Virus record (IMG/VR): IMGVR_UViG_3300044712_001937
Span: 124,001-188,000 of that record
DNA: 64,000 nt
Reading direction: 5' to 3' (one strand)
Shown here: piece by piece, positions 5,074 to 44,500 of the stretch
Layout: every line of letters begins with the position of its first letter
Position numbering within the stretch: position 1 is the stretch's first letter
The notes under the pieces: generated by a model
What the model was told of the DNA's origin: nothing
The model's input: the letters and a program-made list of their open reading frames with translations, nothing else
The model's database searches: none
Position numbers and translations under genes: made by a program

Positions 5074-5156
5074 TTATTTTATTTTTACGTTTATTTGAAA
5101 TAAAGTAACAAATATTAATAATTTTCGTATTTTTGTTAAATTTAAAATTTATATAT

Positions 5157-6623
5157 ATGATATCACCTATTTTAAGTTCGATTAATAAGTTTAATGAAAA
5201 CAATTTTATTCTATTAACTGACAGTTATAAACTAACACATTGGAAACAATATCCCAAAGGTACTACGAAAATTTATTCTTATCTTGAATCCCGTGGTGGT
5301 GAATTTGAGTCAACATTATTTTTTGGATTACAATATTACGTAATTAAATATTTGATTGATGTTCAAATAACTATGGATAATATTGATGAAGCTGAATATT
5401 TAAGTGGAATTCATTTTGGTACTACTGCTAATTTTAATCGTCAGGGTTGGGAACATATTGTTAAAAATCTTAATGGTAAATTACCACTTAAAATTAAGGC
5501 AGTTAAAGAAGGTACTTTAGTTCCAATTTCAAATATATTATTGAGTATTGAAAGTACTGATGAAAAATGTTATTGGTTAACTAATGTGGTTGAAACTTTG
5601 TTACTAAAATTATGGTATCCTATTACAATCGCCAGTAATTCTTTTTATTGTAAGAAAATGATTAAAGAGTGTTTGGAAGAAAGTGGTGGAGTTACTGCTG
5701 GATTACTTTTCAAACTTCATGATTTTGGATATCGTGGTGTTAGTTCCGAAGAAACTGCAGGTATTGGTGGTATGGCTCATTTAGTTAATTTCTTAGGAAC
5801 AGATACTTTAAAAGGCATTGTTTATGCTAACAATTATTATAAATCTGGAGTTTGTGGTTATTCAGTTCCAGCTTCTGAACATTCTGTTGCATGTAGTTTC
5901 GGAAAGGATTTTGAAGATGAATATTTCATGAATATGCTTAAAACATATTCTTCAGGAATAGTTTCAATTGTTTCAGATACTTATGATGTATTTAATTTCG
6001 TAAGTACAATGAGTAATAGGCATAAACAAGCTATTCTTGATAGAGATGGATGTGTTGTATTTCGTCCTGATAGTGGAGATGCTATTGAAGTTTTATCGAA
6101 ATTAATTGATATACTTTGGGATTGTTTCGGTGGTACATATGTTAAAGGATTTAAATTACTTGATTCTCATGTAAGGTTAATTCAAGGTGATGGAATTGAT
6201 AGAAAAACTTTATTGTTAATTATGAAAATGTTAATTAGCAAAGGTTATTCGATTGATAATATTGTATTTGGTTCTGGTGGTGGTCTATTACAAAAATTCG
6301 ATAGAGATACTTGTAAATTTGCAATTAAAGCGAGTTATGGTGAAAGAATTGTTAATGGAAAACTGATAAGTTTTAATATCAGCAAAGACCCTATTACTTC
6401 TAAAGGTAAACGTTCTAAAGCTGGAATGCTTAAACTTATAAAAACAACAGATGATAATTCTTTTAGAACTATTAGTTCTGCAGATATGACAAAAGAAATG
6501 TTTGATAGTTATGAAGATGAACTTGAAGTTGTTTTTGAAAACGGAGAAATTTTGCGTGAACAAACATTTGATGAAATTCGAAAATTATCTGAAAAATATT
6601 TAGAAATATTAATGAAAAATTAA
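5157..6623 (+). CDS. nadV: Nicotinamide phosphoribosyltransferase (NAMPT family)
   Basis: LTDSYKLTHW, LHDFGYRG, PASEHS, SDTYD, RPDSGD, IQGDG, GSGGGLLQK. Confidence 0.95.
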   Translation: MISPILSSINKFNENNFILLTDSYKLTHWKQYPKGTTKIYSYLESRGGEFESTLFFGLQYYVIKYLIDVQITMDNIDEAEYLSGIHFGTTANFNRQGWEHIVKNLNGKLPLKIKAVKEGTLVPISNILLSIESTDEKCYWLTNVVETLLLKLWYPITIASNSFYCKKMIKECLEESGGVTAGLLFKLHDFGYRGVSSEETAGIGGMAHLVNFLGTDTLKGIVYANNYYKSGVCGYSVPASEHSVACSFGKDFEDEYFMNMLKTYSSGIVSIVSDTYDVFNFVSTMSNRHKQAILDRDGCVVFRPDSGDAIEVLSKLIDILWDCFGGTYVKGFKLLDSHVRLIQGDGIDRKTLLLIMKMLISKGYSIDNIVFGSGGGLLQKFDRDTCKFAIKASYGERIVNGKLISFNISKDPITSKGKRSKAGMLKLIKTTDDNSFRTISSADMTKEMFDSYEDELEVVFENGEILREQTFDEIRKLSEKYLEILMKN

Positions 6624-9378: not shown

Positions 9379-11247
9379 TCACTTCTTTACTTTTATTTTA
9401 CATAATTTACTAAAATTGTTACTATCCATTGTTTCCGTATATGTTTTACTATCTATTTCTTGATTTTCAATATTTAATATCTGCCAAAATATATTACGTA
9501 CACGAGTTTGTTTATTTTCTGTAATTGTTATTATAATTTTATTTCCATTTTTTTCATAAATTGTGGAATTAATATGTTTTACATTTACAGAACTATAACT
9601 AATTTTTTGAGATACTGAAAATGTTGTATCTTGTATAGAAGGACTACTACCAGAAGTTTTAGAAGCATAAAGAGTATTACCATATAGACCCATATTTATC
9701 CTACTACCATTTGGTGTAGGTTCTAAAGAATAATCGTCTGAAGGGTTACCTGTATCTATACATGGACTTGTAACTAAATCTAAAGTCCATCCAGTACCAT
9801 TCCAATGTCCTGCTGTAGATTTTAAATGATAGTCTAATGTTACTGTATTTACAAACTGAGGATTTGATGAAATATTTCCTGTACCTGTAGGAATTGAAAA
9901 ACTATTATTATAAAAATCTGAATAGGTATTTGAAAATGTTCCGCTTGTTGGGTAACCCCTTACTTCATATCCATAGCTATTTGAACAATTACTTATTATC
10001 GAATTTGTAATTACATTTCCCACATCTGTCATTTCATAAGGAAACCAGATAAACCTACCAGACCCAATACTATCAAATACGCAATTTTTAATTACATTGT
10101 TATTTGCATTCCATATCTCAATCCCAGAAGCTGCCCCTACAAATAAACTATTAGATATAACATTACCGCTACAAGTCTGCACCCCTTCAGGACCTTCAAT
10201 AGTATTCTGTATAGTTATAGCATTTAAAGGTCTTAAAACTGTTATATTATCAAATTTATTATTATATGCTCCATCTCTAATATCTATACCTTGGCTCCAT
10301 CCCCCCGGTGCGTCTATTGTAGAAATTGCTGTACAATTTAAAAATACATTCCCATAAGATTCATGGGCAACATAAAAATACTCTCCCATATCATAGGCAG
10401 TGCAATTTATAATACTATCTCCTGTACTGTGCGGATTTGGATAAGAACCATTTTTATATTCATCTTTAATTCCAATACCATGCCCTGGTGCACCATATGT
10501 ATAAGGATGTAAATTATATGCCTGACAATTTCGGATAGTGGTATTTTGTACATCTTGTAAGTTTATATGATAATCAGAAGATTCATATACCCAACCCACA
10601 GCAAAACTTTTAGTATTTTCTACCAAACAATCATGGCTTTGTCTCACTATTAAATTTACCATTCCTGCATCAGTAACTGTACAATTCCTTATTGTACAAT
10701 TATATGAACCATGTATATAAAGTCCTACTCCATCAGAATTAACAAAACCATTGGTTGTAGTGTGTACATTTTCAAATGTTACATGATGGGTATTCCAAAC
10801 CCAGATACCAAATACAGCACCTTTAATAGCTATATTCTTAAAATCCACATAAGGTGTGAATGCATCTATAACATCTGCAGAACCATTTGCTCCCTGAATC
10901 ATAGGAATAAGATTCCAATTTATAGAATCGTTGATGCGTAAGAATGGATTATAGTTTGGATTAGGAGTGTCTCCGGGTATTTGATAATACCCTTGAAAAA
11001 CAATATGAGCATTTGCTGTACCCGTACCGCCAACCATAAAATTCTCGTTTTGGTATAAACCAGCCTTTATGAAAATTGTATCTCCTGCTGTCCTTCCGAT
11101 AGAATTAGCATAAGTTACTGTCAAAAATGGAGTACTTGTAGATAAACCATCATTAGAATTACTTCCAGTTTTAGCAACATAGTAATTTGTAGCGTTTATA
11201 ACTAAATTACTAAGTATAAGAAATATTGAAATTATTACTTTCTTCAT
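9379..11247 (-). CDS. Secreted right-handed parallel beta-helix (pectin-lyase fold) protein
   Basis: Signal peptide MKKVIISIFLIL; YYVAKTGSNSNDGLS..PF.T; beta-helix repeats; SPCIDTG...RINMGLYG C-terminal motif. Confidence 0.8.
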   Translation of the reverse strand: MKKVIISIFLILSNLVINATNYYVAKTGSNSNDGLSTSTPFLTVTYANSIGRTAGDTIFIKAGLYQNENFMVGGTGTANAHIVFQGYYQIPGDTPNPNYNPFLRINDSINWNLIPMIQGANGSADVIDAFTPYVDFKNIAIKGAVFGIWVWNTHHVTFENVHTTTNGFVNSDGVGLYIHGSYNCTIRNCTVTDAGMVNLIVRQSHDCLVENTKSFAVGWVYESSDYHINLQDVQNTTIRNCQAYNLHPYTYGAPGHGIGIKDEYKNGSYPNPHSTGDSIINCTAYDMGEYFYVAHESYGNVFLNCTAISTIDAPGGWSQGIDIRDGAYNNKFDNITVLRPLNAITIQNTIEGPEGVQTCSGNVISNSLFVGAASGIEIWNANNNVIKNCVFDSIGSGRFIWFPYEMTDVGNVITNSIISNCSNSYGYEVRGYPTSGTFSNTYSDFYNNSFSIPTGTGNISSNPQFVNTVTLDYHLKSTAGHWNGTGWTLDLVTSPCIDTGNPSDDYSLEPTPNGSRINMGLYGNTLYASKTSGSSPSIQDTTFSVSQKISYSSVNVKHINSTIYEKNGNKIIITITENKQTRVRNIFWQILNIENQEIDSKTYTETMDSNNFSKLCKIKVKK

Positions 11248-11251
11248 ATTA

Positions 11252-12400
11252 TTATGGAATTGGAACATTTAAAACTCCCCAACTTGTACCGTTACTTTCA
11301 CATGTATAAATTTTACCATCACTGCTATCCCTAATACTTCTTCTAGCACCAGCTCCAGCAGTAGCTGCACTACCCAAACAACTAGCATTTGCAACTTCAG
11401 CTTGTGTAGGCGTATTATCAGTTAGTGTACAAGATTTCTGATTTTGTACTATATTTTCTGGAACGTATGTAACTCCATTTAAATAGATTGCTGTTGTTGC
11501 AGTAGTAGTCCCCTCTCTTATAGCTATTGCAGTTAATGTAGTATCTTTTTCTTCTGTTTCTCTGTCCCAAGTCCCAAAAAATAAATAGTGAGATTTAGTT
11601 GAATAAAACCCAGCGTGATTTCCAATACCTACATTATCACTTCCTGAAGCATTATTATATAAAGCATAAGTACCTACTGCTGTATTTCTATTTCCAGAAA
11701 CAGCAACGCCTAATGCTCCCAATCCTATTCCTACATTAGAAGCCCCGTATGCTGCCCATCCACCAATAGTAGACCTACCAATAGCCACATTGTCATCTGC
11801 TCCATTTAAATATATTAAAGCATTTGTTCCTATACCTACATTGTTATTTCCAGTAGAATTTGCATTTAATGCATTAGTTCCTAATTTAACATTAGTTCCT
11901 GAAGTTCCACCACCTCCATAAGTTTGAGCAATAGATATAGCTCTCCCTACAGTTACCATGCAACTGTCGTCTAAAACTACACCTTTATAGATTTGGTTTG
12001 CTACAATGGTGTCATTGCTTAATGAATCTGTATTAATAATATAAGTTAAAGTATCATTTTTACCCCATCTTGTAGTGTCTTGTACTGTAACATTTGATAA
12101 AATTGGGTTACCCTCTCCGGTAATTGACCAGCTTCTATTTATGGTTAAATCTTGTGATACTCCATTTATAGTAATTGTTCTGGATGTTGGTACAAATAAA
12201 TGCCAAATATTTCTAATATAATTTAATAATCTTTTATCATTTCTACCTACAATTTTATTATTACTTTTTACAACACTATTTGTAAATTGATTGGAAGAAA
12301 TAGTATCCATTCTTCCAATAAGAGTATCTGAACTAATTGTTTGTGCTTCCAATTGAAGACTTGTGAAAAATATAAAAATTAATATTAATAGTTTTTTCAT
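11252..12400 (-). CDS. Signal-peptide protein with YadA/Hep-Hag-like head repeats
   Basis: MKKLLILIFIFF; repeated NVGIGTNAL/NTAVGTYAL units. Confidence 0.75.
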   Translation of the reverse strand: MKKLLILIFIFFTSLQLEAQTISSDTLIGRMDTISSNQFTNSVVKSNNKIVGRNDKRLLNYIRNIWHLFVPTSRTITINGVSQDLTINRSWSITGEGNPILSNVTVQDTTRWGKNDTLTYIINTDSLSNDTIVANQIYKGVVLDDSCMVTVGRAISIAQTYGGGGTSGTNVKLGTNALNANSTGNNNVGIGTNALIYLNGADDNVAIGRSTIGGWAAYGASNVGIGLGALGVAVSGNRNTAVGTYALYNNASGSDNVGIGNHAGFYSTKSHYLFFGTWDRETEEKDTTLTAIAIREGTTTATTAIYLNGVTYVPENIVQNQKSCTLTDNTPTQAEVANASCLGSAATAGAGARRSIRDSSDGKIYTCESNGTSWGVLNVPIP

Positions 12401-12410
12401 ATGAATAATT

Positions 12411-13010
12411 TTATAATGATAAATTTTTTATTAAATAATAAATAATCCCATTTCCATGTTTAATGAATTCAATTAAATTATAATTTCCTGAAGTATTATC
12501 AATATCTGATGATAATACATCTTGAATCATACCTGAAAATGTAATTTCAGAACCATTTGCTCTTATAATTAAACTTGCTTTTCCACCAATTATAGTATCA
12601 TTAGAACCACTAATAACTAAAGCACTTACTTGATTATATGTATTATAGTATGTTCCTGAATATTTGTCAAGTTTTACTCCATTAACTGGATTATAATTTA
12701 AATTAGTTATTGGTTTAGAATTTCCAATATCTATAATTTGCTGTGTTGTAAGTCCAGTAGAAACACCACTAATTGGAATATATGCTGCTTTCCATTTATT
12801 TGTTTGACTATCCCATACATAAAACGAGTCAGTATCTCCTATTACAGCATACCAACCATCTAATCCTTCATTATAATTAGATTCTAATTCTGTTTTTGTG
12901 TTAAAAAAACCTTTATATTTTTCACTATTATTATCTAATGTATAAACACCTGTTTTTAAATATTGTCTATAAGCATTTTTAGATAAATTATCAAAATTAT
13001 TTGTTGACAT
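12411..13010 (-). CDS. Hypothetical (possible structural/fibre-associated) protein
   Basis: YKGFF...GWYAVIGDTDSFYVWD motif; preceded by AGTATTTAT motif on minus strand near 13030. Confidence 0.6.
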   Translation of the reverse strand: MSTNNFDNLSKNAYRQYLKTGVYTLDNNSEKYKGFFNTKTELESNYNEGLDGWYAVIGDTDSFYVWDSQTNKWKAAYIPISGVSTGLTTQQIIDIGNSKPITNLNYNPVNGVKLDKYSGTYYNTYNQVSALVISGSNDTIIGGKASLIIRANGSEITFSGMIQDVLSSDIDNTSGNYNLIEFIKHGNGIIYYLIKNLSL

Positions 13011-13171: not shown

Positions 13172-13214
13172 CAGAGTATTTAAATGAAACGAAAATAATA
13201 AAAAATATTTAGAG

Positions 13215-13340
13215 ATGAAAACAACGGTATCAAGTAGAACAATTTCTATATCGACTTCAATTAGTCGCAATGGAAATTCTATATTTTGTTCAAATTTTGG
13301 AGGCAGAAGTAGAAATGATATCGGGTTATTGTTTTCATAA
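13215..13340 (+). CDS. Putative attenuator leader peptide (41 aa, Ser/Thr/Ile/Arg-rich)
   Basis: MKTTVSSRTISISTSISRNGNSIFCSNFGGRSRNDIGLLFS*; 3' end complementary to terminator 5' arm. Confidence 0.65.
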   Translation: MKTTVSSRTISISTSISRNGNSIFCSNFGGRSRNDIGLLFS

Positions 13341-13367
13341 GTTATGTGAACTTTGAAAATTAAACGA

Positions 13368-13398
13368 GAAACCCGATTCGAAAGATTCGGGTTTTTTT
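13368..13398 (+). terminator. Attenuator terminator
   Basis: aaacccga-ttc-gaaa-gat-tcgggttt plus U7. Confidence 0.85.
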
Positions 13399-13414
13399 GT
13401 TTTAAGTTAGTTAT

Positions 13415-13427
13415 GTTCTTTGACATG
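13415..13427 (+). promoter_or_regulatory. boxA-like antitermination element
   Basis: tgttctttgacat just before the first tRNA. Confidence 0.5.
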
Positions 13428-13438
13428 CTGGGAAATTT

Positions 13439-13526
13439 GTCGGGTTGCGTGAGTGGTCGAAACGGGGGTTCTGCAAAAGCTCTATTCCGAAAGGTACACA
13501 TTGGTTCAAATCCAATACCCGACTCA
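13439..13526 (+). tRNA. tRNA-Cys(GCA), long variable arm
   Basis: gtcgggt/acccgac acceptor, ct-gca-aa loop, U73. Confidence 0.85.
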
Positions 13527-13530
13527 ATAT

Positions 13531-13620
13531 TCTTGGGTTGCTTTAGTTGGTCGAAAAGTCCAGACTGTTAATCTGGTGAGATTTATCTCCATCATAGGTT
13601 CGAATCCTATCCCAAGAGCA
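13531..13620 (+). tRNA. tRNA-Asn(GTT), long variable arm
   Basis: tcttggg/cccaaga, ccaga-ctgttaa-tctgg, V-arm gagat-tt-atctc. Confidence 0.85.
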
Positions 13621-13687
13621 GTAATTTATTTATTAATATTTAGGTCGTTTGTTCGAATATAAAGTATTTATATTAAATATTTAATAT

Positions 13688-14272
13688 ATGAGTAATTTAA
13701 AAAATAATATCTTAAAATTAAGAGATGAAGGTAAAACATATAGTGAAATAAGTAAATTATTAAATTGTGCAAAAAGTACGATTTCTTATTATTGTAAATT
13801 ATATGGAAAATCAACTATTATTAGCAATAAAATAAATAATAGTGATATTTTATTATTTCAAGAGTTATATGATAATTATCATTCAGTTAATAAAGTTGCA
13901 TTTATTACAAATAGGTCTAAATCTACAATTTTAAAATATGTTAAAACTATAAAAAGAAATAAACAAACGTATGATGAAATAAAAAAAAATAACATTAAAT
14001 ATGTTAATAACTTTAGAAAAAGATTGAAAATAAAATCAGTTGATTATAAGGGCGGAAAATGTATTAAATGTGGTTATAATAAATGTATAGCAGCATTAGA
14101 ATTTCATCATAGAAATCCAAATAATAAAGATTTTGAAATTTCATCATCAAAAATTTTATCTTGGAATAAAATAAAAATTGAATTAGATAAATGTGATTTA
14201 GTTTGTAGTAATTGTCATAAAGAAATTCATTGGGATGTATCCCCTCTGCCTGATAAGCAGTTGGAAGGGTAA
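13688..14272 (+). CDS. HNH endonuclease with N-terminal HTH
   Basis: GGKCIKCGYNKC..ALEFHH...CSNCHKEIH. Confidence 0.85.
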   Translation: MSNLKNNILKLRDEGKTYSEISKLLNCAKSTISYYCKLYGKSTIISNKINNSDILLFQELYDNYHSVNKVAFITNRSKSTILKYVKTIKRNKQTYDEIKKNNIKYVNNFRKRLKIKSVDYKGGKCIKCGYNKCIAALEFHHRNPNNKDFEISSSKILSWNKIKIELDKCDLVCSNCHKEIHWDVSPLPDKQLEG

Positions 14273-14310
14273 TTTGGTTACATAAGGGTTCAATTCCCTT
14301 CTTCCCAACT
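14231..14310 (+). tRNA. Atypical tRNA-Ile(GAT)-like RNA lacking canonical D-arm
   Basis: tgggatg/cttccca acceptor; ctgc-ctgataa-gcag; T-arm aaggg-ttcaatt-ccctt; D-loop-like aatttggtta placed 3' of anticodon arm. Confidence 0.6.
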
Positions 14311-14317
14311 AAAATAT

Positions 14318-14402
14318 AGTGACGTGGATGAATGGTTTAGTCACCAGTCTGATACACTGGATTCTTAGGAATAATATGGGTTCGAATCCCATCGTCACTA
14401 CA
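14318..14402 (+). tRNA. tRNA-Ile(GAT), long variable arm
   Basis: agtgacg/cgtcact; ccagt-ctgatac-actgg; V-arm attc-ttag-gaat. Confidence 0.85.
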
Positions 14403-14457
14403 ATATTTAATAATAAATATTATGATATTAAATAAGTATTTATTATAAAATTTATTT

Positions 14458-14757
14458 ATGAAAAATATTAAATCAAAACAAAGACTATTTGAAGTTATTC
14501 AAAAAATAGATGACACTTATAAATCTAAAGAAATTCTTAATGAAACTAAAGCTTTTGGCAAATTAAGAAAATTAAATAAAAATTTATACGATGATACTAT
14601 TAATTTGGAAGAAAAAATTGGTGAAAATGTATTAAATTTAATTAAAGATTCTATTGAAAAAAATAATTTAAAATATAAAAATGATGAAGAACGTAAATTG
14701 GTATATCTTATAATTTTAGATTTGATTCTTAGTCGTTTTTTAGATAAAACAGAATAA
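14458..14757 (+). CDS. Hypothetical protein
   Basis: ORF after AGTATTTAT motif. Confidence 0.6.
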   Translation: MKNIKSKQRLFEVIQKIDDTYKSKEILNETKAFGKLRKLNKNLYDDTINLEEKIGENVLNLIKDSIEKNNLKYKNDEERKLVYLIILDLILSRFLDKTE

Positions 14758-14762
14758 CAATT

Positions 14763-14855
14763 GGAAAGTTACCCAAGTTGGTGAAGGGGACACACTGCTA
14801 ACGTGTTAGGTCATCTAATAAATGGCGCAAGAGTTCGAGTCTCTTACTTTCCGCA
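14763..14855 (+). tRNA. tRNA-Ser(GCT)
   Basis: Class II cloverleaf, ct-gct-aa, G73. Confidence 0.9.
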
Positions 14856-14919
14856 TTTGGTTTTTGGGTCTACTCCCGTGCTCAAGGATATCAAAAAATA
14901 TTTGTTAACGGGAGTCCTT

Positions 14920-15076
14920 GGAGAATTGGCAGAGTTGTTTAATGCGATGGTCTGGTTCAATATGATTGATTAAGGGTGAACTCCTTAGTCTTTTGCTCAT
15001 GAACGAAAACTATTGTTGCAAAGTAGAGAAGCAAATATTGAAAGCAACCAGAGGTTCGAAACCTTTATTCTCCACA
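14920..15076 (+). tRNA. tRNA-Ser(CGA or GGA)-like with 50-nt anticodon-loop insert
   Basis: ggagaat/attctcc, Ser-type D-arm, atggt-ct[insert]cgaaa-actat, enlarged V-arm. Confidence 0.65.
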
Positions 15077-15081
15077 AAAAT

Positions 15082-15170
15082 GGAAGATTGTCCGAGTGGT
15101 TTATGGAGGCGGTCTTGAAAACCGTTGTGCCCTAAAAAGCACCGTAGGTTCGAATCCTACATCTTCCGCA
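15082..15170 (+). tRNA. tRNA-Ser(TGA)
   Basis: Canonical class II cloverleaf. Confidence 0.93.
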
Positions 15171-15245
15171 ATAGAATCCCTTAAATAAGTAGTTGGTGTT
15201 GCCCCGTTACTGATGAGGATATTTGGGATAGTGTACGGGTTCTTT

Positions 15246-15330
15246 GGAAAGTAGCACTCAATGGTGAGTAACAAGGCTTGAACCCTTGGCTATCCTCCGG
15301 GGTAAGCGTTCGATTCGTTTACTTTCCGCA
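15246..15330 (+). tRNA. tRNA-Ser(TGA), 8/4 (allo-tRNA-like) fold
   Basis: ggaaagta/tactttcc 8-bp acceptor, agcg/cgtt 4-bp T-stem, caagg-cttgaac-ccttg. Confidence 0.75.
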
Positions 15331-15331
15331 C

Positions 15332-15577
15332 TTAAGTTGAATTTGCAGTTCAATTTAATATATGAATAGATAAGAACAATAGTATCTGCAAACTGCTATA
15401 AGTGTGTTTGTTCATATTGAATCCTTGCTTGCTTGGGACGCTGCTTCTAATGTTCAGTTGGGGTATTAAAATGCATCCGTGATTGACAACACGGAAACAA
15501 TAAAAATATCTTCCGAGACATTATCATGTTCGCAATAACATGTGGAATGCGTGAGTATAAGGCTCACACAAGGATTA
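15332..15577 (+). ncRNA. Unknown structured RNA(s) between tRNAs
   Basis: Two hairpins with complementary loops (tttgcag/ctgcaaa); multibranch domain closed by aatccttg/caaggatt. Confidence 0.5.
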
Positions 15578-15582
15578 AATCT

Positions 15583-15656
15583 GGTGACGTAGCTGAGTTG
15601 GTTTAGCGATGCCCTGAAAAGGCATAGAGGTCGGTTCGATTCCGACAGTCACCACA
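15583..15656 (+). tRNA. tRNA-Phe(GAA)
   Basis: atgcc-ctgaaaa-ggcat. Confidence 0.9.
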
Positions 15657-15818
15657 ATTAAAATCTGGTCACATAAGTGTATGTCCTAACCAGAAATACA
15701 TAACCTCATTAGCAGGGAGTATCTTAGTTTGGGCAACTAAGAATGTGAAAATAAAAATAGGTCGGGTTGCAGGTGGCGCAATTTGGCTAACTGTCTCACA
15801 AGGCATCCTATATAATAT

Positions 15819-15893
15819 GGAGATATAGCAAAGATGGTCTATGCAACGGACTGAAAATCCGAGGATACTGGCTCGATACCAGTTATCTCCACA
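15819..15893 (+). tRNA. tRNA-Phe(GAA), second copy
   Basis: cgga-ctgaaaa-tccg. Confidence 0.85.
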
Positions 15894-15902
15894 AAATAAT
15901 TT

Positions 15903-15976
15903 GCGAGTGTAGCACAACGGTTAGTGCGCCAGACTTCCAATCTGGGGATGTGGGTTCGATTCCCTTCACTCGCTCA
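15903..15976 (+). tRNA. tRNA-Gly(TCC)
   Basis: gcgagtg/cactcgc, ct-tcc-aa, U73. Confidence 0.92.
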
Positions 15977-15979
15977 TTT

Positions 15980-16053
15980 GAAGCTATAGTTTAATTGGAT
16001 AGAATGTCCCCAGCAAAGGGGTTGGTATAAGTTCGAGTCTTGTTGGCTTCACA
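15980..16053 (+). tRNA. tRNA-like RNA with aberrant anticodon loop
   Basis: Acceptor, D and T arms intact; cccc-agcaaa-gggg, no U33. Confidence 0.55.
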
Positions 16054-16103
16054 ATAGGTCTGAGGGAGTCCTTTGAAGGTATAAATAACCTGTCCCTCTC
16101 CAC

Positions 16104-16176
16104 GCAATAGTAGCATAGCGGTTAGTGTATCTGCCTACCACGCAGAATTTCGTGAGTTCGAGTCTCACCTATTGCT
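16104..16176 (+). tRNA. tRNA-Gly(ACC)
   Basis: gcaatag/ctattgc, tctgc-ct-acc-ac-gcaga, U73. Confidence 0.8.
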
Positions 16177-16225
16177 CTCGGTCGTTTTTTGTACTTCTCA
16201 GTATTTATATTGAAAAGTACAAATT

Positions 16226-16906
16226 ATGGCAAGAAAAGAAAAACAATACCATTTCATTTATAAAACTACTAATATTTTAACTGGTAAATATTATTATGGA
16301 ATGCATAGTGGCAATAATCTGGAGGATGGTTATTTAGGTTCAGGTAAAAGATTAAGACGTTCTATAAATAAATATGGCAAAGAAAACCATAAACGTGAAA
16401 TTATTGAATTTCTTCCGGATAGAAAATCTTTAATTGAACGTGAGAAAGAAATTGTTAATTTAAATGAAATTGCAAAAGTAGATTGCATGAATTTAGTTGT
16501 TGGTGGAAATGGTGGATTTAATGTAGAAATTGTGAAAAAGGGAAGATTAGCTGTTGATAATATTATGATAACAAGATATGGTATTAATTGGCGTTCTATT
16601 TTAGCTAAAAAAACTTTTAGTGATTTATCAATCAATAAACGTAATGAAATTAATAAAAAAATAATTGAAACCAATAAAAAAAATGGATTTACTTATGATA
16701 ATTTTAAAAATAAAAAGCATACCGAAGAAACAAGGAAAAAATTGAGTAAATCAAGAAAAGGAACAGGAATTGGTAATAAAAATTCACAATTTGATACATG
16801 TTGGATTACTAAAAATGGTATTAATAAAAAAATAAAAAAAGAAAATTTAATTTTATATTTAAAAGATAATTGGATTAAAGGTAGAAAATTAAAATGCATT
16901 CTATAG
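16226..16906 (+). CDS. GIY-YIG (Seg-like) homing endonuclease with NUMOD3
   Basis: FIYKTTN..TGKYYYGMH...YLGSG; KKHTEETRKKLS. Confidence 0.9.
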   Translation: MARKEKQYHFIYKTTNILTGKYYYGMHSGNNLEDGYLGSGKRLRRSINKYGKENHKREIIEFLPDRKSLIEREKEIVNLNEIAKVDCMNLVVGGNGGFNVEIVKKGRLAVDNIMITRYGINWRSILAKKTFSDLSINKRNEINKKIIETNKKNGFTYDNFKNKKHTEETRKKLSKSRKGTGIGNKNSQFDTCWITKNGINKKIKKENLILYLKDNWIKGRKLKCIL

Positions 16907-19883: not shown

Positions 19884-19962
19884 GCATCTGTAGCTCAATT
19901 GGATTAGAGCACCTGTCTACGAAACAGGAGGTTTAAGGGTTCGAATCCCTTCAGATGTACTA
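19884..19962 (+). tRNA. tRNA-Arg(ACG)
   Basis: cctgt-ctacgaa-acagg. Confidence 0.92.
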
Positions 19963-20462: not shown

Positions 20463-21176
20463 ATGGAAAAATGGAATGAAAATTCGATAAATTTATTACT
20501 TAAATATTTTAATGAAAATAAATCATATGAAGAAATAGCATTATTATTAAATCGAACATATTCTTCAATAAAAAATAAATTAAATAAACTTGGGTATAAA
20601 TTTAGAGATGTTAATCCTGCAATAATTTCTTATAAATGTGAAAATTGTGGAAATGAATTTAATGATAAAACTTCTGTTGAACGAAGATTTTGTTCAAATT
20701 CATGCGCAGCAAAAATTAATAATAAATTAAGGCATAAAATAAGTGATAAAAAATGTTTAAATTGTAATAAAATATTACATTCACATCAAAATAAATATTG
20801 TTCAAATAATTGTTGTACTGAATATCATTGGAAACAAACAATAACTAAAATCGAAAATGGCGATACATCATTTAATGAAAGAATATATAAAAAATATTTA
20901 ATTCATAAACATGGAAACAAATGTATGAAATGTGGTTGGAATGAAATTAATCCTGTAACTAAATTAGTTCCAATACAACTTGAACATAAAGATGGAAATT
21001 CTGATAACCATAATTTAAATAATTTAGAATTATTATGTCCTAATTGTCATTCACTAACTCCAACATTTGGTGCATTAAATAAAGGAAATGGACGTGATGC
21101 ATTAAAAAAGAAAAAATTAATATTCAAAGAAATAAAGTGTGATAATACATGGCAAAGGTCTACCCCGTCACACTAA
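20463..21176 (+). CDS. HNH endonuclease with Zn-finger repeats
   Basis: CENCG..FCSNSC; CMKCG...LEHKDGN..N...LLCPNCH. Confidence 0.88.
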   Translation: MEKWNENSINLLLKYFNENKSYEEIALLLNRTYSSIKNKLNKLGYKFRDVNPAIISYKCENCGNEFNDKTSVERRFCSNSCAAKINNKLRHKISDKKCLNCNKILHSHQNKYCSNNCCTEYHWKQTITKIENGDTSFNERIYKKYLIHKHGNKCMKCGWNEINPVTKLVPIQLEHKDGNSDNHNLNNLELLCPNCHSLTPTFGALNKGNGRDALKKKKLIFKEIKCDNTWQRSTPSH

Positions 21177-21179
21177 AAT

Positions 21180-22068
21180 AAATAACACAGAGGATTCATC
21201 GCTGTAGCAATACAGAGGAAGTTCAACACATCTCCGCAAAAAGTGGGAGGCTCAACGTTAATCGGAGTCGTTAATACCACTGAGGATGCAAGCCATACAG
21301 ATTTAGACGGTGTGCGGGTCTATGATAATCGGGTTGGTGCTTAGATAAATGATGAATTTAAGTTCTTTGATTTTTTATTTCATTATTTATTTTTTATAGT
21401 ATTTATATTTATAATTGAATATTATGAAAAATAAAATTTATTATGTGTATCAATTAATTTCTTCAAATGATGAAATTTTTTACATTGGAAAAGGTTCTGG
21501 TAATAGAATGTATCAGCATGTTAGTATTGCTATGGGTAAATCAATTAGTAGAACAAAAAATCTTAAACTATATAATAAAATAAAGAAAATTATTGATAGT
21601 GGTGGATTTATTAAATGTGAAATTATTTTTAAAAGTGAAAATGAAAATGATTGTTTTAATGAAGAAATAAGACTTATAGAAAAAATAGGTCTTATTAATT
21701 TATGTAATTTAACTATTGGTGGTGAAGGTACTTCGGGATATAAATTATCTGAAGAAACTAAATTAAAAATGTCTTTAGCTAAAAAAGATAAAAAAAGAGA
21801 AAATATAAGTAAAATTCATAAAGAAAATTTATTAAAAAATCCTCAAATTTTTAAAATTGGTCATGATGGTTATTGGAATGGTAAAACATTATCTGAAGAA
21901 ACTAAATTAAAAATGTCTTTAGCTAAAAAAGGTCGTAAATTTTCAAAAGAACATAAAGAAAAAATATCGCAATCATTAAAAGGACGAGAACTTTCAGAAA
22001 CACATAAAAATAATATTAAAAAATCAAAGACTTATTAAAACAGAAAGTTGACTACGCTCATGTTATTT
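21180..22068 (+). ncRNA. rnpB: Minimal RNase P RNA interrupted by a homing-endonuclease insert
   Basis: P1 aaataaca/tgttattt; P2 attcatc/gatgaat; P3 ctgta-gcaa-tacag; GAGGAAGUUCAAC pairing with AACAGAAA-GUUGACU (P4 with bulged U); tagataaat before the P2 3' strand. Confidence 0.85.
21424..22038 (+). CDS. GIY-YIG homing endonuclease with NUMOD3 repeats, inside rnpB
   Basis: YYVYQL...FYIGKGSGNR...NLTIGGEG; LSEETKLKMS twice. Confidence 0.88.
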   Translation: MKNKIYYVYQLISSNDEIFYIGKGSGNRMYQHVSIAMGKSISRTKNLKLYNKIKKIIDSGGFIKCEIIFKSENENDCFNEEIRLIEKIGLINLCNLTIGGEGTSGYKLSEETKLKMSLAKKDKKRENISKIHKENLLKNPQIFKIGHDGYWNGKTLSEETKLKMSLAKKGRKFSKEHKEKISQSLKGRELSETHKNNIKKSKTY

Positions 22069-24035: not shown

Positions 24036-24111
24036 GGCTCTATAGCTCAATTGGTCAGAGTGACAGTCTCTAAAACTGGAGGTTATGGGTTCGAACCCCA
24101 TTAGAGCCACA
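24036..24111 (+). tRNA. Amber suppressor tRNA (anticodon CTA)
   Basis: ggctcta/tagagcc; cagt-ct-cta-aa-actg; canonical D and T arms; A73. Confidence 0.9.
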
Positions 24112-32287: not shown

Positions 32288-33187
32288 ATGGAAACTACTG
32301 ATTTAGTAAAAAATGCAATAATGGAAAAAGAAGAAAATAAAGGAAAAGATTTTACAGCAACCACTGGTAAAGGTGGTGGTTTAAGATTTAACAAAGGTAA
32401 ACTAAGATATGATTTAGTTCAACCAAGAGCACATCAGGATATGGTAGAAGTATTAACAGATGGTGCTAATAAATATTTCGCAAGAAATTGGGAAAATGGT
32501 TTATCTTGGACATCTGTAATTGCAAGTCTTAAAAGACATATATGTGCTATTGAAAAAGGAGAAGATTATGACCCTGAAAGTGGTAGATTGCATATTGCAC
32601 ATGCAGCATGTAATGTTCATTTTTTAAATGCATTTTATTATATATTTCCACAAGGTGATGATAGACCTAAACGTTTTTTAAAAACGCCTAAAATTGGATT
32701 AGATATTGATGGTGTTTTAGCTGATTTTTCAGGTTCTTGGTCAACACTTTATCCAGAAATTCAAGCTCAACCTAATTCATGGTTTTTTGATAGGAAAATT
32801 AGTGAAAGATTTAATATAATGCGTGAAAACGGTGAGTTAGATGAATTTTATTTGAATTTAAAACCATTAATTAATCCAGAAGAATTGCCTTTTGAACCAT
32901 GTTGTTATATTACATCAAGACCTGTTGATAGTAAAATCACAGAACAATGGCTTGATAAAAATAATTTTCCATGTAAACCTGTAATTTCTGTTGATATCAG
33001 AAAAAGTAAAGTAGAAGTTGCTAAAGAACAAGGTATTGAGTTTTTTATTGATGATTCATATGAAAATTTTGTTGATTTAAATAATAATGGCATATTTACT
33101 TATTTATATACTACATCTTGGAATAAAAGGTATGATGTAGGTCATATGCGCTTAAATTGTTTAAAAGATTTACCATTTCTTAAATAA
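32288..33187 (+). CDS. dATP/dGTP diphosphohydrolase (DUF5664-like) fused to HAD 5'-nucleotidase
   Basis: KLRYDL...GANKY..RNW..G..W...SLKRH...DPESG.LHIAHAACN; then LDIDGVLADF, ITSR, FIDD. Confidence 0.85.
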   Translation: METTDLVKNAIMEKEENKGKDFTATTGKGGGLRFNKGKLRYDLVQPRAHQDMVEVLTDGANKYFARNWENGLSWTSVIASLKRHICAIEKGEDYDPESGRLHIAHAACNVHFLNAFYYIFPQGDDRPKRFLKTPKIGLDIDGVLADFSGSWSTLYPEIQAQPNSWFFDRKISERFNIMRENGELDEFYLNLKPLINPEELPFEPCCYITSRPVDSKITEQWLDKNNFPCKPVISVDIRKSKVEVAKEQGIEFFIDDSYENFVDLNNNGIFTYLYTTSWNKRYDVGHMRLNCLKDLPFLK

Positions 33188-41511: not shown

Positions 41512-44500
41512 ATGTATTTTATGAATATTTTTAATATTATTAAAGAAGAAATTCAAAACGTTGATGAAACATACCAAAGTGTTAGTGAAATAAAACAATT
41601 AGCATCAGATATTTTGATGAAAACTGCTGAAAAAAATGTTGAGAATTTTAATAATAAACATGTTTTTGATTATTTATATGGTATACATTTAAGTGAAATA
41701 GATACTTATAAATATACTGATTTGGTTGATTTTATAAAAAATATAAATATACAAATTTACTATGTACCTAAAGAAAATAACGGTATATATGGAAATTATT
41801 CAGTTTATAATATTAAATCAAAAAAAGAATTTAATCCTAATGCATCAAGAGAAATTAATGCGTTTTATGATTATCAAGATTTGAAAAATGATATTGATAG
41901 TTACATTAAACAAAATAATGGTATTGATGATAAAATACTATATATTAAAATATTTTATAAATTCTACAATACATTAATACATGAGTTACAACATGCTTAT
42001 GATGATTATCGCAGTAAAACTATGGCTTTTAATACTAAACAAAATAAAAGTTATAGAAATAAATATGATACTGCAGTAAATACGAATCAAAATCAAAATG
42101 AATTGCAATATGATTTAGAGAAAAATAAAGCATATCTTAATTTACCACATGAAATTTGGGCAAGATTTACTCAAGCAGTAACAAAAACATATTTCAGTAC
42201 TGTTGATTTTAAAAGTGATAATACAATTACCAATTTAATGTATCCTATTGACAAAGTTGTTGATAATTTTAAAAGAAATTTTCAAGGATATCATCTCCTA
42301 TCTGATAATATGAAAAAAAAATTACTTAATAAAGTAGTCCAATTTTGGCATTATGAACAGGATAAAATAAATAAAAGAAATAGTGATAAAAATAGTAATG
42401 AAATTAATAGTGATAAACCAATTAGTGAAGCTGCTAAAAATATATCTGATACTGAAATTATAATAGATAAAGGAACTGAATTATTTCATGGAACTATTGA
42501 AGAATTTGAAAAGGAAAAAACAACAGTTGGTGGCTATGATAATATATTTTGGACTACATTAGATTCTTCAATTGCTCAAACATATATTCCACAGTCAAGT
42601 AATATATATACTAATAGTAGTCATTATGCAATGCCAAGTGACGACCCTATGGTTGTTAAAACTCAATTAATAATGGGAATTAATTATGATTATTCAAAAG
42701 CTGAATTTAAAAATCATAGAGCAATTTCATATTTTGAAGCACCTATTTTTCAAGAATATTCAGATAATTATGAAAAAGCAAATAATTTAGCGTATCAGAA
42801 ATATCTCGAAATTGAAAATTTTATAAAAGAAGTTAAAATTAAAGAAACTAATGATACTGTAACCGATGAGGATTATGATAAATGGGGAGTATTACAAGAT
42901 GAATATGATTATTTACTTAAACAATCCAGAGAGCTTAATGTCAGTAAATTTAAAAATGATTTTGTTAACCAAAAGTTTATGGAAATGGGTTATAAACCAA
43001 CTGGAACTGAACACGCTCCAGATAATAATTATAGCTGGAAATTAAAATATGATAATGGTCAAGTACAACCTGCAAATTATAAAGCAAAAGGTAGATTGTT
43101 AATAGTAATTCCACAAAGAGATTTAAAAATATTAGACACTACTGATAGAGGTAATCGTGAAGGTGATTTAACTGATTTGGATTATCATAAACATAATTGG
43201 TTTCAAAGTGCTGAACAACATGGCTATGATGGAATTAAAATTAATGATTTTGCACAAAGTTCAGACCAAGGAAATCTTGGACATACTTCTATCGGTTTAT
43301 TTAAAAATACTTTAAAAGATGTTAAAATTGAAGAAATTGACGCAACTCATAATGATTTAGAACCTCATTTTCAAAGTAGTAATTGGCAATCACCTGAATA
43401 TAAAAAATATAAAGGAATTAATGAAATAATTGATGAAGAATTAGAAAAAATTATTCATATTTACGAAAATCCAGATATTGTTAAAAGTGAAGAAAATAAT
43501 ATTAATATTCATTATAATGACCGTAATGCCTATCCTTTTACAACATTTAAAGATTTTGGTAATAGAGTCTTCATAGGAAAAGAAGGTGGTACACATACTA
43601 CAATTGTTTATTATTATAAAGATGAATTACCTTCTGATGTTATGGATAGAATGAGACTTCATATTGAATATGATGGTAGAATTTTTCTTAATGAAAAAAT
43701 AATTTCATTTTGGCATTATCCTGATGAAGATAATTTTAAAGAAATAATTATAAATCTTGAAAAAGCTTTCTTAAATGATAGACATATGAATGTTAATATT
43801 TGGAATGACCCGAATTATAAAATTGAAGTTAAAAATTCAGATTTAAGTTATAATATTATTCCAATTCAACAATATATTAAATCTGAAAATCCAAGTGAAC
43901 TTGATTATAAACAACATATTATGTCTCCATTACTTAAACAAAAAAAATCAGTTCCTCTTGGCTATGGTTCAAAAAACCCTAAAAATACACCTGAATATAG
44001 AAATATGAGAAGAATAGAATTTCAAAGTGATGAAAGTATTAAACATTTAAATAAAATAATTTCTGAAATGGCTAATATATTAAATGAAGGTATCCCTGTA
44101 TTTCACGGTTCAGATAGAAAATTCTCAACTTTCGATATGTCAAAAATTGGAAGTGGTGATGGAAAAAATTTAGGTGGCTGGGGAATTTATTTTTCAGATA
44201 GCGAAGATGTTAGTAGTCGATATGTAACTTCAAATGGTTTCTTAGGTGAATATGAACTACGCAATGGAAACTATTTCGACTTAGACTCAGCATTAGAAGA
44301 TGGTGAACGTATAATTAGAAGACTTCAACAATTAGGAATAGATGAAAATCAAATTGAAGAATTTCAAAATGACTATGTGGAACAAGCTGAAAATTATGGT
44401 AATATTGATAATAAGCAAGCATATGATTGGCTTTCATATGTATTAGGTGGAGAAAAAGAAGCTTCAATGTTCCTTAAATCTATGGGATATATCGGAAATA

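What the first reader, a model, noticed from the sequence alone, without database searches (positions are those of the whole stretch)
14920..15076. tRNA-Ser with a 50-nt hairpin inserted in the anticodon
Seen: removing 14954-15003 gives CU-CGA-AA, and removing 14955-15004 gives CU-GGA-AA. Both are Ser anticodons otherwise absent from this window. The insert folds as a long hairpin (gttca/tgaac, gattaagg/ccttagtc) and is too short for a group I intron. Inference: a protein-spliced mini-intron or a masked-anticodon mimic.
Basis: partly seen in the sequence, partly recalled or inferred. Interest (0 to 1): 0.6.

Follow-up and report, generated by a model that had tools for sequence, protein, structure and literature searches.

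The report
Hairpin-interrupted tRNA-Ser gene in huge phage
A 365-kb soil phage carries one serine-tRNA gene copy whose anticodon loop is filled by a 50-base hairpin; the copy is real but found in no related phage and no known splicing route fits, so it is most likely a non-decoding tRNA-like leftover rather than a new kind of intron.

Summary
Window 14920-15076 holds a complete tRNA-Ser-type frame: a 7-bp acceptor stem, D arm, 5-bp anticodon stem and TTCGAAA T arm. Removing 50 nt gives CGA, GGA or GGT (Thr), depending on the offset. The window lies in a complete 364.7-kb phage genome from rhizosphere metagenomes, with 49 tRNAs, a tmRNA and many homing endonucleases. The locus is identical in other samples, so it is not an assembly error.

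The gene is absent from 108 related loci and from the closest reachable relative. The insert has no second copy anywhere searched. It matches no Rfam family, is not a group I intron and has no bulge-helix-bulge motif. The phage encodes no EndA, RtcB or RNase III. It does encode Rnl1- and Rnl2-type ligases, but those are common jumbo-phage repair genes. The D loop lacks GG and the discriminator is A rather than G.

Best reading (0.5): an unspliced, non-decoding tRNA-Ser derivative, comparable to T4 species 1 RNA. Protein-mediated splicing, as proposed for the Lak megaphage "enigmatic introns", remains possible (about 0.22). No RNA data could be obtained.

The parts
14920..14926 (+). acceptor stem, 5' strand (GGAGAAT)
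   Evidence: Pairs 7/7 with 15067-15073; recovered by the frame scan.
14929..14945 (+). D arm: 3-bp stem GCA/TGC with an 11-nt loop that has TTG where all related Ser tRNAs have GG
   Evidence: alignment with 28 clade Ser tRNAs.
14947..14951 (+). anticodon stem, 5' strand (ATGGT)
   Evidence: Pairs with 15009-15013 (ACTAT), including one G-U pair.
14952..15008 (+). 57-nt 'anticodon loop': CT, the 50-nt insert, and (C/G)GAAA
14955..15004 (+). 50-nt hairpin insert in its neatest register (closing helix GTTCA/TGAAC); removing it leaves CT-GGA-AA
   Evidence: Fold (z = -2.37); offsets. No second copy in the genome, the 116 loci then in hand, or IMG/VR.
14968..14994 (+). main stem-loop of the insert (9 pairs, 5-nt loop) followed by TTTT; resembles an intrinsic terminator
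   Evidence: Flagged; one of only two + strand terminator-like sites in 13200-16300.
15009..15013 (+). anticodon stem, 3' strand (ACTAT)
15014..15049 (+). enlarged variable arm (36 nt): stem GTTGC/GCAAC (15015-15019 with 15044-15048) and a large loop holding an imperfect direct repeat GAAGCAA / GAAAGCAA
   Evidence: The fold is not better than shuffles (z = -1.07). About 18 nt longer than in the aligned related Ser tRNAs.
15050..15066 (+). T arm AGAGG-TTCGAAA-CCTTT; position 60 is A where 26 of 28 relatives have T
   Evidence: The nearest match is the T arm of Ser(GGA) in L010 and L035 (3' exon searched alone).
15067..15075 (+). acceptor 3' strand ATTCTCC, discriminator A (24 of 28 related Ser tRNAs have G), then C; no encoded CCA
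14763..14854 (+). upstream neighbour, ordinary tRNA-Ser(GCT)
15082..15169 (+). downstream neighbour, ordinary tRNA-Ser(TGA), starting 5 nt after the candidate

Best explanation
The locus is a lineage-specific paralogue of this phage clade's UCN-type tRNA-Ser genes. It has acquired two hairpin-forming expansions, 50 nt in the anticodon loop and about 18 nt in the variable arm. As encoded, it cannot decode.

Inferred mechanism: it is transcribed with the tightly packed tRNA array. Its intact acceptor/T-arm half lets RNase P and the 3'-end enzymes, plus the phage CCA-adding enzyme, release an RNA of about 155 nt. The anticodon arm is lengthened by roughly two helical turns, which puts any loop out of reach of the decoding centre. 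The RNA therefore persists as a tRNA-like by-product. I think it is most probably a young, neutral or decaying copy made in an array rich in homing endonucleases and prone to rearrangement. Less probably it is a stable tRNA-like RNA with a role of its own, like T4 species 1 RNA. The insert's stem-loop plus U tract may also stop some transcripts.

Shown here: the anatomy, the descent from tRNA-Ser, the absence from relatives, and the absence of features of known splicing systems. Inferred: transcription, end processing and lack of splicing.
For: 1. Not conserved. No homologue of the insert, and no insert-bearing Ser gene, occurs in the 108 loci from related phages, which carry the syntenic Cys-Asn-Ile-Ser-Phe-Gly array. 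In L124, the closest relative reached (80-92% nt identity across the array), Ser(GCT) is followed by a SegE-like GIY-YIG gene and then Ser(TGA), with no trace of the candidate. Four IMG/VR scans with segments of the candidate found nothing.

2. Departures from otherwise conserved Ser features: GG is missing from the D loop, the discriminator is A instead of G, T-loop position 60 is A, and the variable arm is oversized.

3. No known splicing route fits. There is no Rfam family and no group I intron. No bulge-helix-bulge motif is compatible with a 7-nt loop (read from the sequence). PF01974 (splicing endonuclease), PF01139 (RtcB) and PF14622 (RNase III) are absent from the complete phage genome.

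4. The neighbourhood is a zone of gene birth and death. A degenerate Ser-like gene lies at 15246-15329 and is called by ARAGORN only. HNH and GIY-YIG endonuclease genes are scattered through the array. Ser(CGA) and Ser(GGA) occur in only 3 of the relatives.

5. Precedent for unspliced, expanded tRNA-like RNAs. T4 rnaC (139 nt) has a T arm and terminal stem with long extra hairpins, and lies in the T4 tRNA cluster beside segB. This clade also has conserved, covarying expanded tRNA-like families.
Against: All 20 stem pairs are intact. Both insertions sit in loops and fold on themselves, and the cloverleaf is energetically competitive. That pattern suits either a very recent event or selection on the fold.

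A GGA anticodon would be useful: UCU is 15.6 per 1000 codons and the phage has no dedicated tRNA for it.

The phage has an Rnl1-type ligase between its tRNA arrays.

Lak megaphages have conserved inserts in tRNAs, interpreted as introns.

No RNA data were available, so non-splicing is inferred rather than shown. All available copies are identical, so selection could not be measured.
Confidence: 0.5

Rival explanations
1. The hairpin is a true intervening sequence. An unidentified endonuclease, from phage or host, cuts both sides of it, and the phage Rnl1- or Rnl2-type ligase reseals the anticodon loop. The product is a functional tRNA-Ser(GGA), or CGA, that reads UCU/UCC. This would be a protein-spliced mini-intron in a bacterial virus.
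For: Excising exactly the hairpin (14955-15004) restores a canonical CT-GGA-AA loop. All stems are intact and the cloverleaf is feasible. GGA and CGA are otherwise absent although UCU is a major codon. Relatives L010, L011 and L035 carry ordinary Ser(CGA) and Ser(GGA) in this block. Rnl1 (phrog_562, E = 1e-59), an Rnl2-like ligase and a CCA-adding enzyme are encoded. Lak megaphage tRNAs have conserved inserts interpreted as introns.
Against: No endonuclease candidate and no recognisable splice-site motif were found. The excision register is ambiguous (CGA, GGA or GGT). The insert is not conserved anywhere. Rnl1 and Rnl2 are common jumbo-phage repair genes directed against anticodon nucleases (PMC7824862), so they are not specific evidence. 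The product would still lack G18/G19 and G73 and would carry a 36-nt variable arm. There are no RNA data.
Confidence: 0.22
2. The insert acts mainly as a transcription or processing signal. Its stem-loop plus U tract is an intrinsic terminator or attenuator placed inside a dead tRNA gene, dividing the array into transcription units.
For: Positions 14968-14990 followed by TTTTGCTCAT are one of only two + strand terminator-like sites in 13200-16300. Seven sites were found on both strands against 1.5 expected, and several of the others are T arms read on the opposite strand.
Against: The match is weak: 3 G-C pairs and only four consecutive T. An ordinary tRNA-Ser starts 5 nt after the candidate with no promoter-like site between them. 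The feature is not conserved in relatives.
Confidence: 0.08
3. The locus is an assembly or chimera artefact that joins two tRNA-Ser genes.
For: Tandem Ser genes with similar ends do lie here. ARAGORN's intron mode itself builds a chimera from the candidate's 5' half and the next gene.
Against: The identical sequence appears in contigs from two other JGI samples; a Logan contig encodes the same neighbouring genes at the same spacing, but its DNA could not be read. The two halves form one perfect acceptor stem and match no other gene in the genome.
Confidence: 0.02

Closest known systems
'Enigmatic introns' in Lak megaphage tRNAs (Devoto et al. 2019, PMC6784885; preprint 10.1101/356790)
   Same: Over-long pseudo-tRNAs in a huge, low-GC phage. 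They are not called by bacterial tRNA finders, the insert lies in or near the anticodon loop, no Rfam class fits, and the mechanism is unknown.
   Different: The Lak inserts are conserved, often identical, across cohorts, and insert-free alleles allow the excision point to be mapped. This insert is confined to one phage lineage and no insert-free allele was found. The Lak cases are Phe, Gly, Thr and Tyr, not Ser.
Phage T4 species 1 RNA (rnaC), a stable RNA of unknown function in the T4 tRNA cluster
   Same: About 140-155 nt, with a canonical T arm and a terminal acceptor-like stem plus long extra hairpins. It lies at the edge of a tRNA cluster beside a GIY-YIG homing endonuclease.
   Different: There is no detectable sequence relationship. 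The candidate is still recognisably a tRNA-Ser with a D arm and anticodon stem in register. rnaC is strongly structured (z = -4.6), the candidate only modestly (z = -1.9).
Archaeal and eukaryal protein-spliced tRNA introns (bulge-helix-bulge motif, EndA endonuclease, RtcB or Trl1 ligase)
   Same: A short intervening sequence without a ribozyme in the anticodon loop that extends the anticodon helix.
   Different: No bulge-helix-bulge geometry. The canonical 37/38 register would give a Thr anticodon. The phage has no EndA and no RtcB. The tmRNA gene points to a bacterial host.
Group I introns in bacterial and phage tRNA genes (for example tRNA-Leu(UAA) of cyanobacteria)
   Same: They interrupt the anticodon loop of a bacterial-type tRNA gene.
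   Different: Group I introns are around 200 nt or longer with a conserved catalytic core (from my own knowledge). This insert is 50 nt and has no Intron_gpI match.
Conserved expanded tRNA-like families found here in related phages (Family B in L065, L103, L106, L011, L025, L037 and L042; Family A next to TROVE/Ro60 genes)
   Same: The same clade and the same architecture: an intact acceptor/T-arm half with an anticodon arm lengthened by about two helical turns, ending in a 7-nt loop closed by GG/CC.
   Different: Families A and B are conserved and show compensatory base changes (12 of 24 pairs in Family B). The candidate has no relatives and no sequence similarity to them.

Membership tests
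Canonical bacterial-type tRNA-Ser (class II) | 7-bp acceptor stem, 3-bp D stem, 5-bp anticodon and T stems, T-loop TTCRANN | tested here: met
   all 20 pairs form.
Canonical bacterial-type tRNA-Ser (class II) | 7-nt anticodon loop with U33 and a Ser anticodon | tested here: not met
   The loop as encoded is 57 nt. A Ser anticodon appears only after a hypothetical 50-nt removal.
Canonical bacterial-type tRNA-Ser (class II) | G18G19 in the D loop and a G73 discriminator, as in the clade's Ser tRNAs | tested here: not met
   TTG replaces GG. The discriminator is A, whereas 24 of 28 relatives have G.
Canonical bacterial-type tRNA-Ser (class II) | Recognised by tRNA finders | tested here: not met
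   ARAGORN with and without intron mode, and Rfam RF00005 even at E up to 10, give no call.
Group I intron in a tRNA gene | Catalytic core (P3-P9) and a length of roughly 200 nt or more | tested here: not met
   50 nt; no Rfam Intron_gpI match.
Protein-spliced (archaeal/eukaryal-type) tRNA intron | Bulge-helix-bulge or relaxed helix-bulge-helix motif placing both splice sites in 3-nt bulges 4 bp apart | tested here: not met
   Read. The anticodon stem is followed by a 3x4 internal loop and a 5-bp helix. No register gives staggered bulges and a 7-nt loop.
Protein-spliced (archaeal/eukaryal-type) tRNA intron | Splicing endonuclease (EndA/Sen) and RtcB- or Trl1-type ligase available | tested here: not met
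   PF01974 and PF01139 are absent from the complete phage genome. The host is unknown, so host enzymes could not be tested. Rnl1 and Rnl2 are present.
Protein-spliced (archaeal/eukaryal-type) tRNA intron | A spliced, ligated RNA product exists | not testable with these tools
   No RNA run holds the locus.
Lak-type phage tRNA 'introns' | Over-long pseudo-tRNA in a huge phage whose insert fits no Rfam class | tested here: met
   compared.
Lak-type phage tRNA 'introns' | The same insert conserved in the same tRNA across related phages, with insert-free alleles | tested here: not met
   Absent from 108 related loci, from L124 and from the IMG/VR scans.
tRNA pseudogene or relic | Not conserved in relatives and has lost otherwise invariant nucleotides | tested here: met
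tRNA pseudogene or relic | Decay of the helices | tested here: not met
   All stems are intact. This fits only a very young relic.
Y RNA / YrlA-type tRNA-like RNA | Encoded next to a Ro60/Rsr (TROVE) gene, or a match to Rfam Y-RNA models | tested here: not met
   No TROVE gene in this genome; no Rfam hit.

The most novel reading that the evidence does not exclude
The 50-nt hairpin is a genuine protein-spliced intron of a bacterial virus. A so far unknown endonuclease excises it, and the phage's T4-Rnl1-type ligase reseals the anticodon loop to give tRNA-Ser(GGA). This would be one instance of a wider, undescribed ability of this huge-phage clade to carry and process hairpin expansions in tRNA genes.
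Probability: 0.15. Interest if true: 0.8.

Novelty: new member of a known kind. Interest (0 to 1): 0.35.

Why it matters
If the insert were spliced, it would be a ribozyme-free tRNA intron in a bacterial system. That would give a physiological role to phage anticodon-loop ligases beyond repair, and it would make the unexplained 'introns' of huge-phage tRNAs directly testable.

If it is an unspliced relic or tRNA-like RNA, which I think more likely, its main value is as a snapshot of how fast tRNA arrays turn over in huge phages. It is also a caution that tRNA counts from standard finders miss such genes.

The more substantial leads came from the surroundings. Related phages carry conserved, covarying tRNA-like RNAs with lengthened arms, and one of these families sits next to a Ro60-like gene.

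Tried and rejected
Read data. No strain variation or RNA evidence was obtained. Region calls started at 13200 or later, and L038, which contains the same stretch, was used only in a local comparison.

Joined model. One local script also contained an insert-removed string built from the window file, before I applied that note. I do not rely on its result. The alignment of the unspliced gene shows the same relationship.

Relatives. The YqeY anchor gave only distant loci. The clusters at 90% identity for four neighbouring proteins were singletons.

Rejected ideas:
- A known ribozyme in the insert: no Rfam hit.
- A repeated mobile element or MITE: the insert has no second copy.
- A Y-RNA partner of Ro60: this genome has no TROVE gene.
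- An alternative genetic code behind the oddities: table 11 reads the genome densely.
- Rfam's alternative tRNA parse of Family B: by my reading of the sequences, its D stem does not pair in L065 or L011.

Not used: the large protein searches, structure prediction and complex prediction. No claim here rests on them.

Full report
WHAT THE WINDOW IS

The window is bases 124001-188000 of a single 364,702-bp IMG/VR virus record. The record has direct terminal repeats and is rated complete. It is 26% GC and is found in rhizosphere metagenomes. ARAGORN finds 49 tRNAs and a tmRNA, mostly in two arrays. The array in the window is interspersed with HNH and GIY-YIG homing-endonuclease genes and a YqeY-like gene. 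Table 11 reads the genome densely, and TAG is the rarest stop codon, ending 11 of 252 long ORFs.

THE OBSERVATION

- Acceptor stem: 7 bp, 14920-14926 with 15067-15073.
- D arm: 14929-14945.
- Anticodon stem: 5 bp, 14947-14951 with 15009-15013.
- T arm: AGAGG-TTCGAAA-CCTTT, 15050-15066.
- Between C32/T33 and the 3' part of the loop lie 50 extra nucleotides.

The extra nucleotides continue the anticodon helix as GTTCA/TGAAC, an internal loop, then GATTAAGG/CCTTAGTC with a 5-7-nt apical loop. The fold has z = -2.37, and 4 of 200 shuffles do as well.

Removing 14954-15003 leaves CT-CGA-AA. Removing 14955-15004 (exactly the hairpin) or 14956-15005 leaves CT-GGA-AA. From 14957 onward, including the canonical 37/38 intron position, the result is GGT, a Thr anticodon. 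The implied anticodon therefore depends on the cut register. CGA and GGA occur nowhere else in the genome.

The variable region (15014-15049) is 36 nt, about 18 nt longer than in the aligned related Ser tRNAs, and it contains an imperfect direct repeat. No tRNA finder calls the gene.

A cloverleaf with both enlarged arms costs only 1 kcal/mol more than the free minimum. A strict scan for acceptor stem plus T arm over both strands of the genome returned 37 frames. One is an AT-rich, likely spurious frame; the rest are tRNAs or tRNA-like genes, so the frame is not a chance match. The sequence is identical in contigs from two other JGI samples, which excludes a one-off misassembly.

WHAT IT DESCENDS FROM

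I used the conserved VWA gene upstream as an anchor. It retrieved 29 viral and 79 metagenomic loci from related phages, at 44-80% protein identity. Most of the longer loci carry the same array order, Cys-Asn-Ile-Ser...-Phe-Gly. Three of them (L010, L011, L035) have ordinary Ser(TGA), Ser(CGA) and Ser(GGA) in tandem where this genome has Ser(GCT), the candidate, Ser(TGA) and a degenerate Ser-like gene.

The unspliced candidate aligns end to end with 28 clade Ser tRNAs at up to 71% identity, and no single isoacceptor type stands out. Searched separately, the 5' exon matches the D-arm region of Ser genes and the 3' exon matches the T arm of Ser(GGA) in L010 and L035. The locus is therefore a tRNA-Ser paralogue.

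It also departs from the clade consensus at otherwise near-invariant places:
- the D loop has no GG;
- the discriminator is A, where 24 of 28 relatives have G;
- T-loop position 60 is A, where 26 of 28 relatives have T.

IS IT CONSERVED?

No. The insert has no similarity to anything in the loci then in hand or elsewhere in the genome. A frame scan of all loci found no Ser gene with an insert. Four exact or degenerate IMG/VR scans with the candidate's 5' half, D arm, T arm and hairpin found nothing.

I reached the closest relative, L124, through a variant at 90% or higher identity of a protein 2.9 kb downstream. L124 is 80-92% identical at the nucleotide level across the array. It goes from Ser(GCT) to a SegE-like GIY-YIG gene and then Ser(TGA), with no trace of the candidate. 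The only copies I could see were 100% identical, so selection could not be measured.

COULD IT BE SPLICED?

- It is far too short for a group I intron and matches no Rfam family.
- The junctions show a 3x4 internal loop followed by a 5-bp helix. No register gives two 3-nt bulges 4 bp apart together with a 7-nt loop, so there is no bulge-helix-bulge motif (read).
- The complete phage genome has no splicing endonuclease, no RtcB and no RNase III.
- It does encode a clear T4 gp63/Rnl1 homologue between its two tRNA arrays (phrog_562, E = 1e-59), an Rnl2-like ligase and a CCA-adding enzyme.
- The jumbo-phage literature treats these enzymes as common repair tools against host anticodon nucleases (PMC7824862). 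Their presence allows splicing but does not indicate it.
- Codon use would favour a GGA tRNA: UCU is 15.6 per 1000 codons, UCC 1.7 and UCG 2.3.
- No RNA run holds the locus. I kept away from that stretch afterwards.

CONTEXT THAT MATTERS

This clade is rich in over-long tRNA-like genes that the finders miss.

Family B has seven members, about 113 nt each, in related phages (L065, L103, L106, L011, L025, L037, L042). It has an intact acceptor/T-arm half and an anticodon arm lengthened by about two turns, ending in an invariant 7-nt loop closed by GG/CC. Twelve of its 24 predicted pairs keep pairing through changes on both sides. No known ribozyme matches it.

Family A is 132-141 nt. This genome has two copies, at genome positions 10240-10373 and 11096-11227 on the minus strand. 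It carries about 60 extra nt between the acceptor 5' strand and the D arm, and its anticodon stem covaries. In all four relatives that have a TROVE (Ro60-like) gene, Family A lies 0.3-1 kb upstream of it. That is the layout of bacterial rsr and Y-RNA pairs. This genome has no TROVE gene.

T4 species 1 RNA (rnaC, 139 nt) is a long-known stable RNA of unknown function in the T4 tRNA cluster, beside segB. It too folds with a T arm, a terminal stem and long extra hairpins.

Unspliced, expanded tRNA-like RNAs are therefore an established product of phage tRNA clusters. The only published phage 'tRNA introns' are those of Lak megaphages. They are conserved, and their mechanism is unknown.

VERDICT

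I commit to the following, at about 0.5. The locus is a young, lineage-specific tRNA-Ser paralogue with two hairpin expansions. It is probably still cut out of the array transcript, because its acceptor/T-arm half is intact. It is not spliced and cannot decode. It is more likely a neutral or decaying copy than a functional tRNA-like RNA.

Protein-mediated splicing to give tRNA-Ser(GGA) remains a real possibility at about 0.22. A role mainly as a terminator is a minor one at about 0.08: the stem-loop at 14968-14990 plus TTTT was flagged. An assembly artefact is essentially excluded.

The finding is a new member of a known but unexplained kind: insert-bearing pseudo-tRNAs of huge phages. Its interest is moderate to low because it is a singleton without conservation. 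The conserved families in its relatives are the better targets.

PROCEDURAL NOTES

One early local script also held an insert-removed string, and its result is not used here.

Noticed in passing
window 13439-13525, 13531-13619, 14318-14401; genome-wide: Many amino acids that normally use short (class I) tRNAs have two phage tRNAs here: one of normal length (72-74 nt) and one of 84-89 nt with a paired long variable arm. The isotypes are Cys, Asn and Ile in the window, and Gln, Glu, Val, Trp and Lys elsewhere in the genome. Related phages show the same mix of lengths. Long variable arms on these isotypes are unusual, and I have no explanation.
   Followed up: partly
genome 10240-10373 and 11096-11227 (minus strand, outside the window); L124:706-1015, L057:9502-9642, L101:3405-3540, L034:13664-13800: Family A is a conserved tRNA-like RNA of 132-141 nt (GGGGAGA...TCTCCCC) with about 60 extra nt between the acceptor 5' strand and the D arm, and a covarying anticodon stem. 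In every relative that has a TROVE/Ro60-like gene, it lies 0.3-1 kb upstream of that gene, like a Y RNA next to rsr. This genome has two copies but no TROVE gene.
   Followed up: partly
L065:5427-5539, L103:2338-2450, L106:4974-5086, L011:5373-5487, L025:5104-5217, L037:4765-4878, L042:2019-2132: Family B is a conserved tRNA-like RNA of about 113 nt in the Lys/Tyr array of related phages. Its anticodon arm carries a structured insert of about 40 nt with an invariant core (GGGTTTACAACC). Twelve of 24 pairs show compensatory changes. This genome has no member. Its function is unknown.
   Followed up: partly
L031:14209-14312 (same in L093), L089:12650-12754, L057:12537-12630: Family C is a tRNA-like frame of 104-105 nt with a Ser-like D arm and a long covarying hairpin. 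In L031 it lies directly upstream of Ser(TGA), the same slot as the candidate, but the two have no sequence similarity.
   Followed up: partly
genome 278205-278314 (minus) and 219501-219596 (plus), outside the window: Two more odd tRNA-like genes. The first reaches Rfam tRNA at 38.9 bits, with a 19-nt segment where the model expects 5 in the anticodon loop, and a long variable arm. The second is a 96-nt gene that ends in an encoded CCA; ARAGORN calls it His(ATG), and Rfam gives a weak local match to the ends of the tmRNA model.
   Followed up: partly
window 15246-15329: A second 'tRNA-Ser(TGA)' called only by ARAGORN. It has a poor D arm and an unpaired variable region, and its acceptor stem is identical to that of Ser(GCT) at 14763. 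It looks like a degenerate or recombinant copy.
   Followed up: partly
window 14231-14308: A weak tRNA match in Rfam only (30.8 bits against a threshold of 29). It overlaps the end of the HNH ORF at 13688-14272, and L124 has a 78%-identical counterpart.
   Followed up: no
window 24036-24110: An amber-suppressor-type tRNA (anticodon CTA). Several relatives have one too. The genome nevertheless reads densely under table 11, and TAG ends only 11 of 252 long ORFs.
   Followed up: partly
window 9379-13010 (minus strand): A block of three genes lies between the VWA gene and the tRNA array: a 629-aa beta-helix protein, a 382-aa virion-structural-like protein and a 199-aa ORF. None of the 29 viral relatives then fetched has a counterpart, so the block looks like an insertion in this lineage.
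   Followed up: partly
window 13688-14272, 16226-16906, 20463-21176, 21415-22038; genome 117559-118608: Four free-standing HNH or GIY-YIG homing-endonuclease genes lie inside the tRNA array. Another GIY-YIG gene sits directly upstream of the Rnl1-type RNA ligase gene, between the two arrays.
   Followed up: partly
window 16104-16177 and 19884-19960: tRNA-Gly(ACC) and tRNA-Arg(ACG) both have A at the wobble position. ACC is an unusual anticodon for Gly.
   Followed up: no
window 5133-6623, 32288-33187, 41512-44574: Three auxiliary genes: a nicotinamide phosphoribosyltransferase-like gene, a dATP/dGTP diphosphohydrolase-like gene, and a 1020-aa protein with an ADP-ribosyltransferase (ART-PolyVal) domain.
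   Followed up: no
Nothing was laid. I did not examine the stretch or send it to any search tool afterwards.
   Followed up: no
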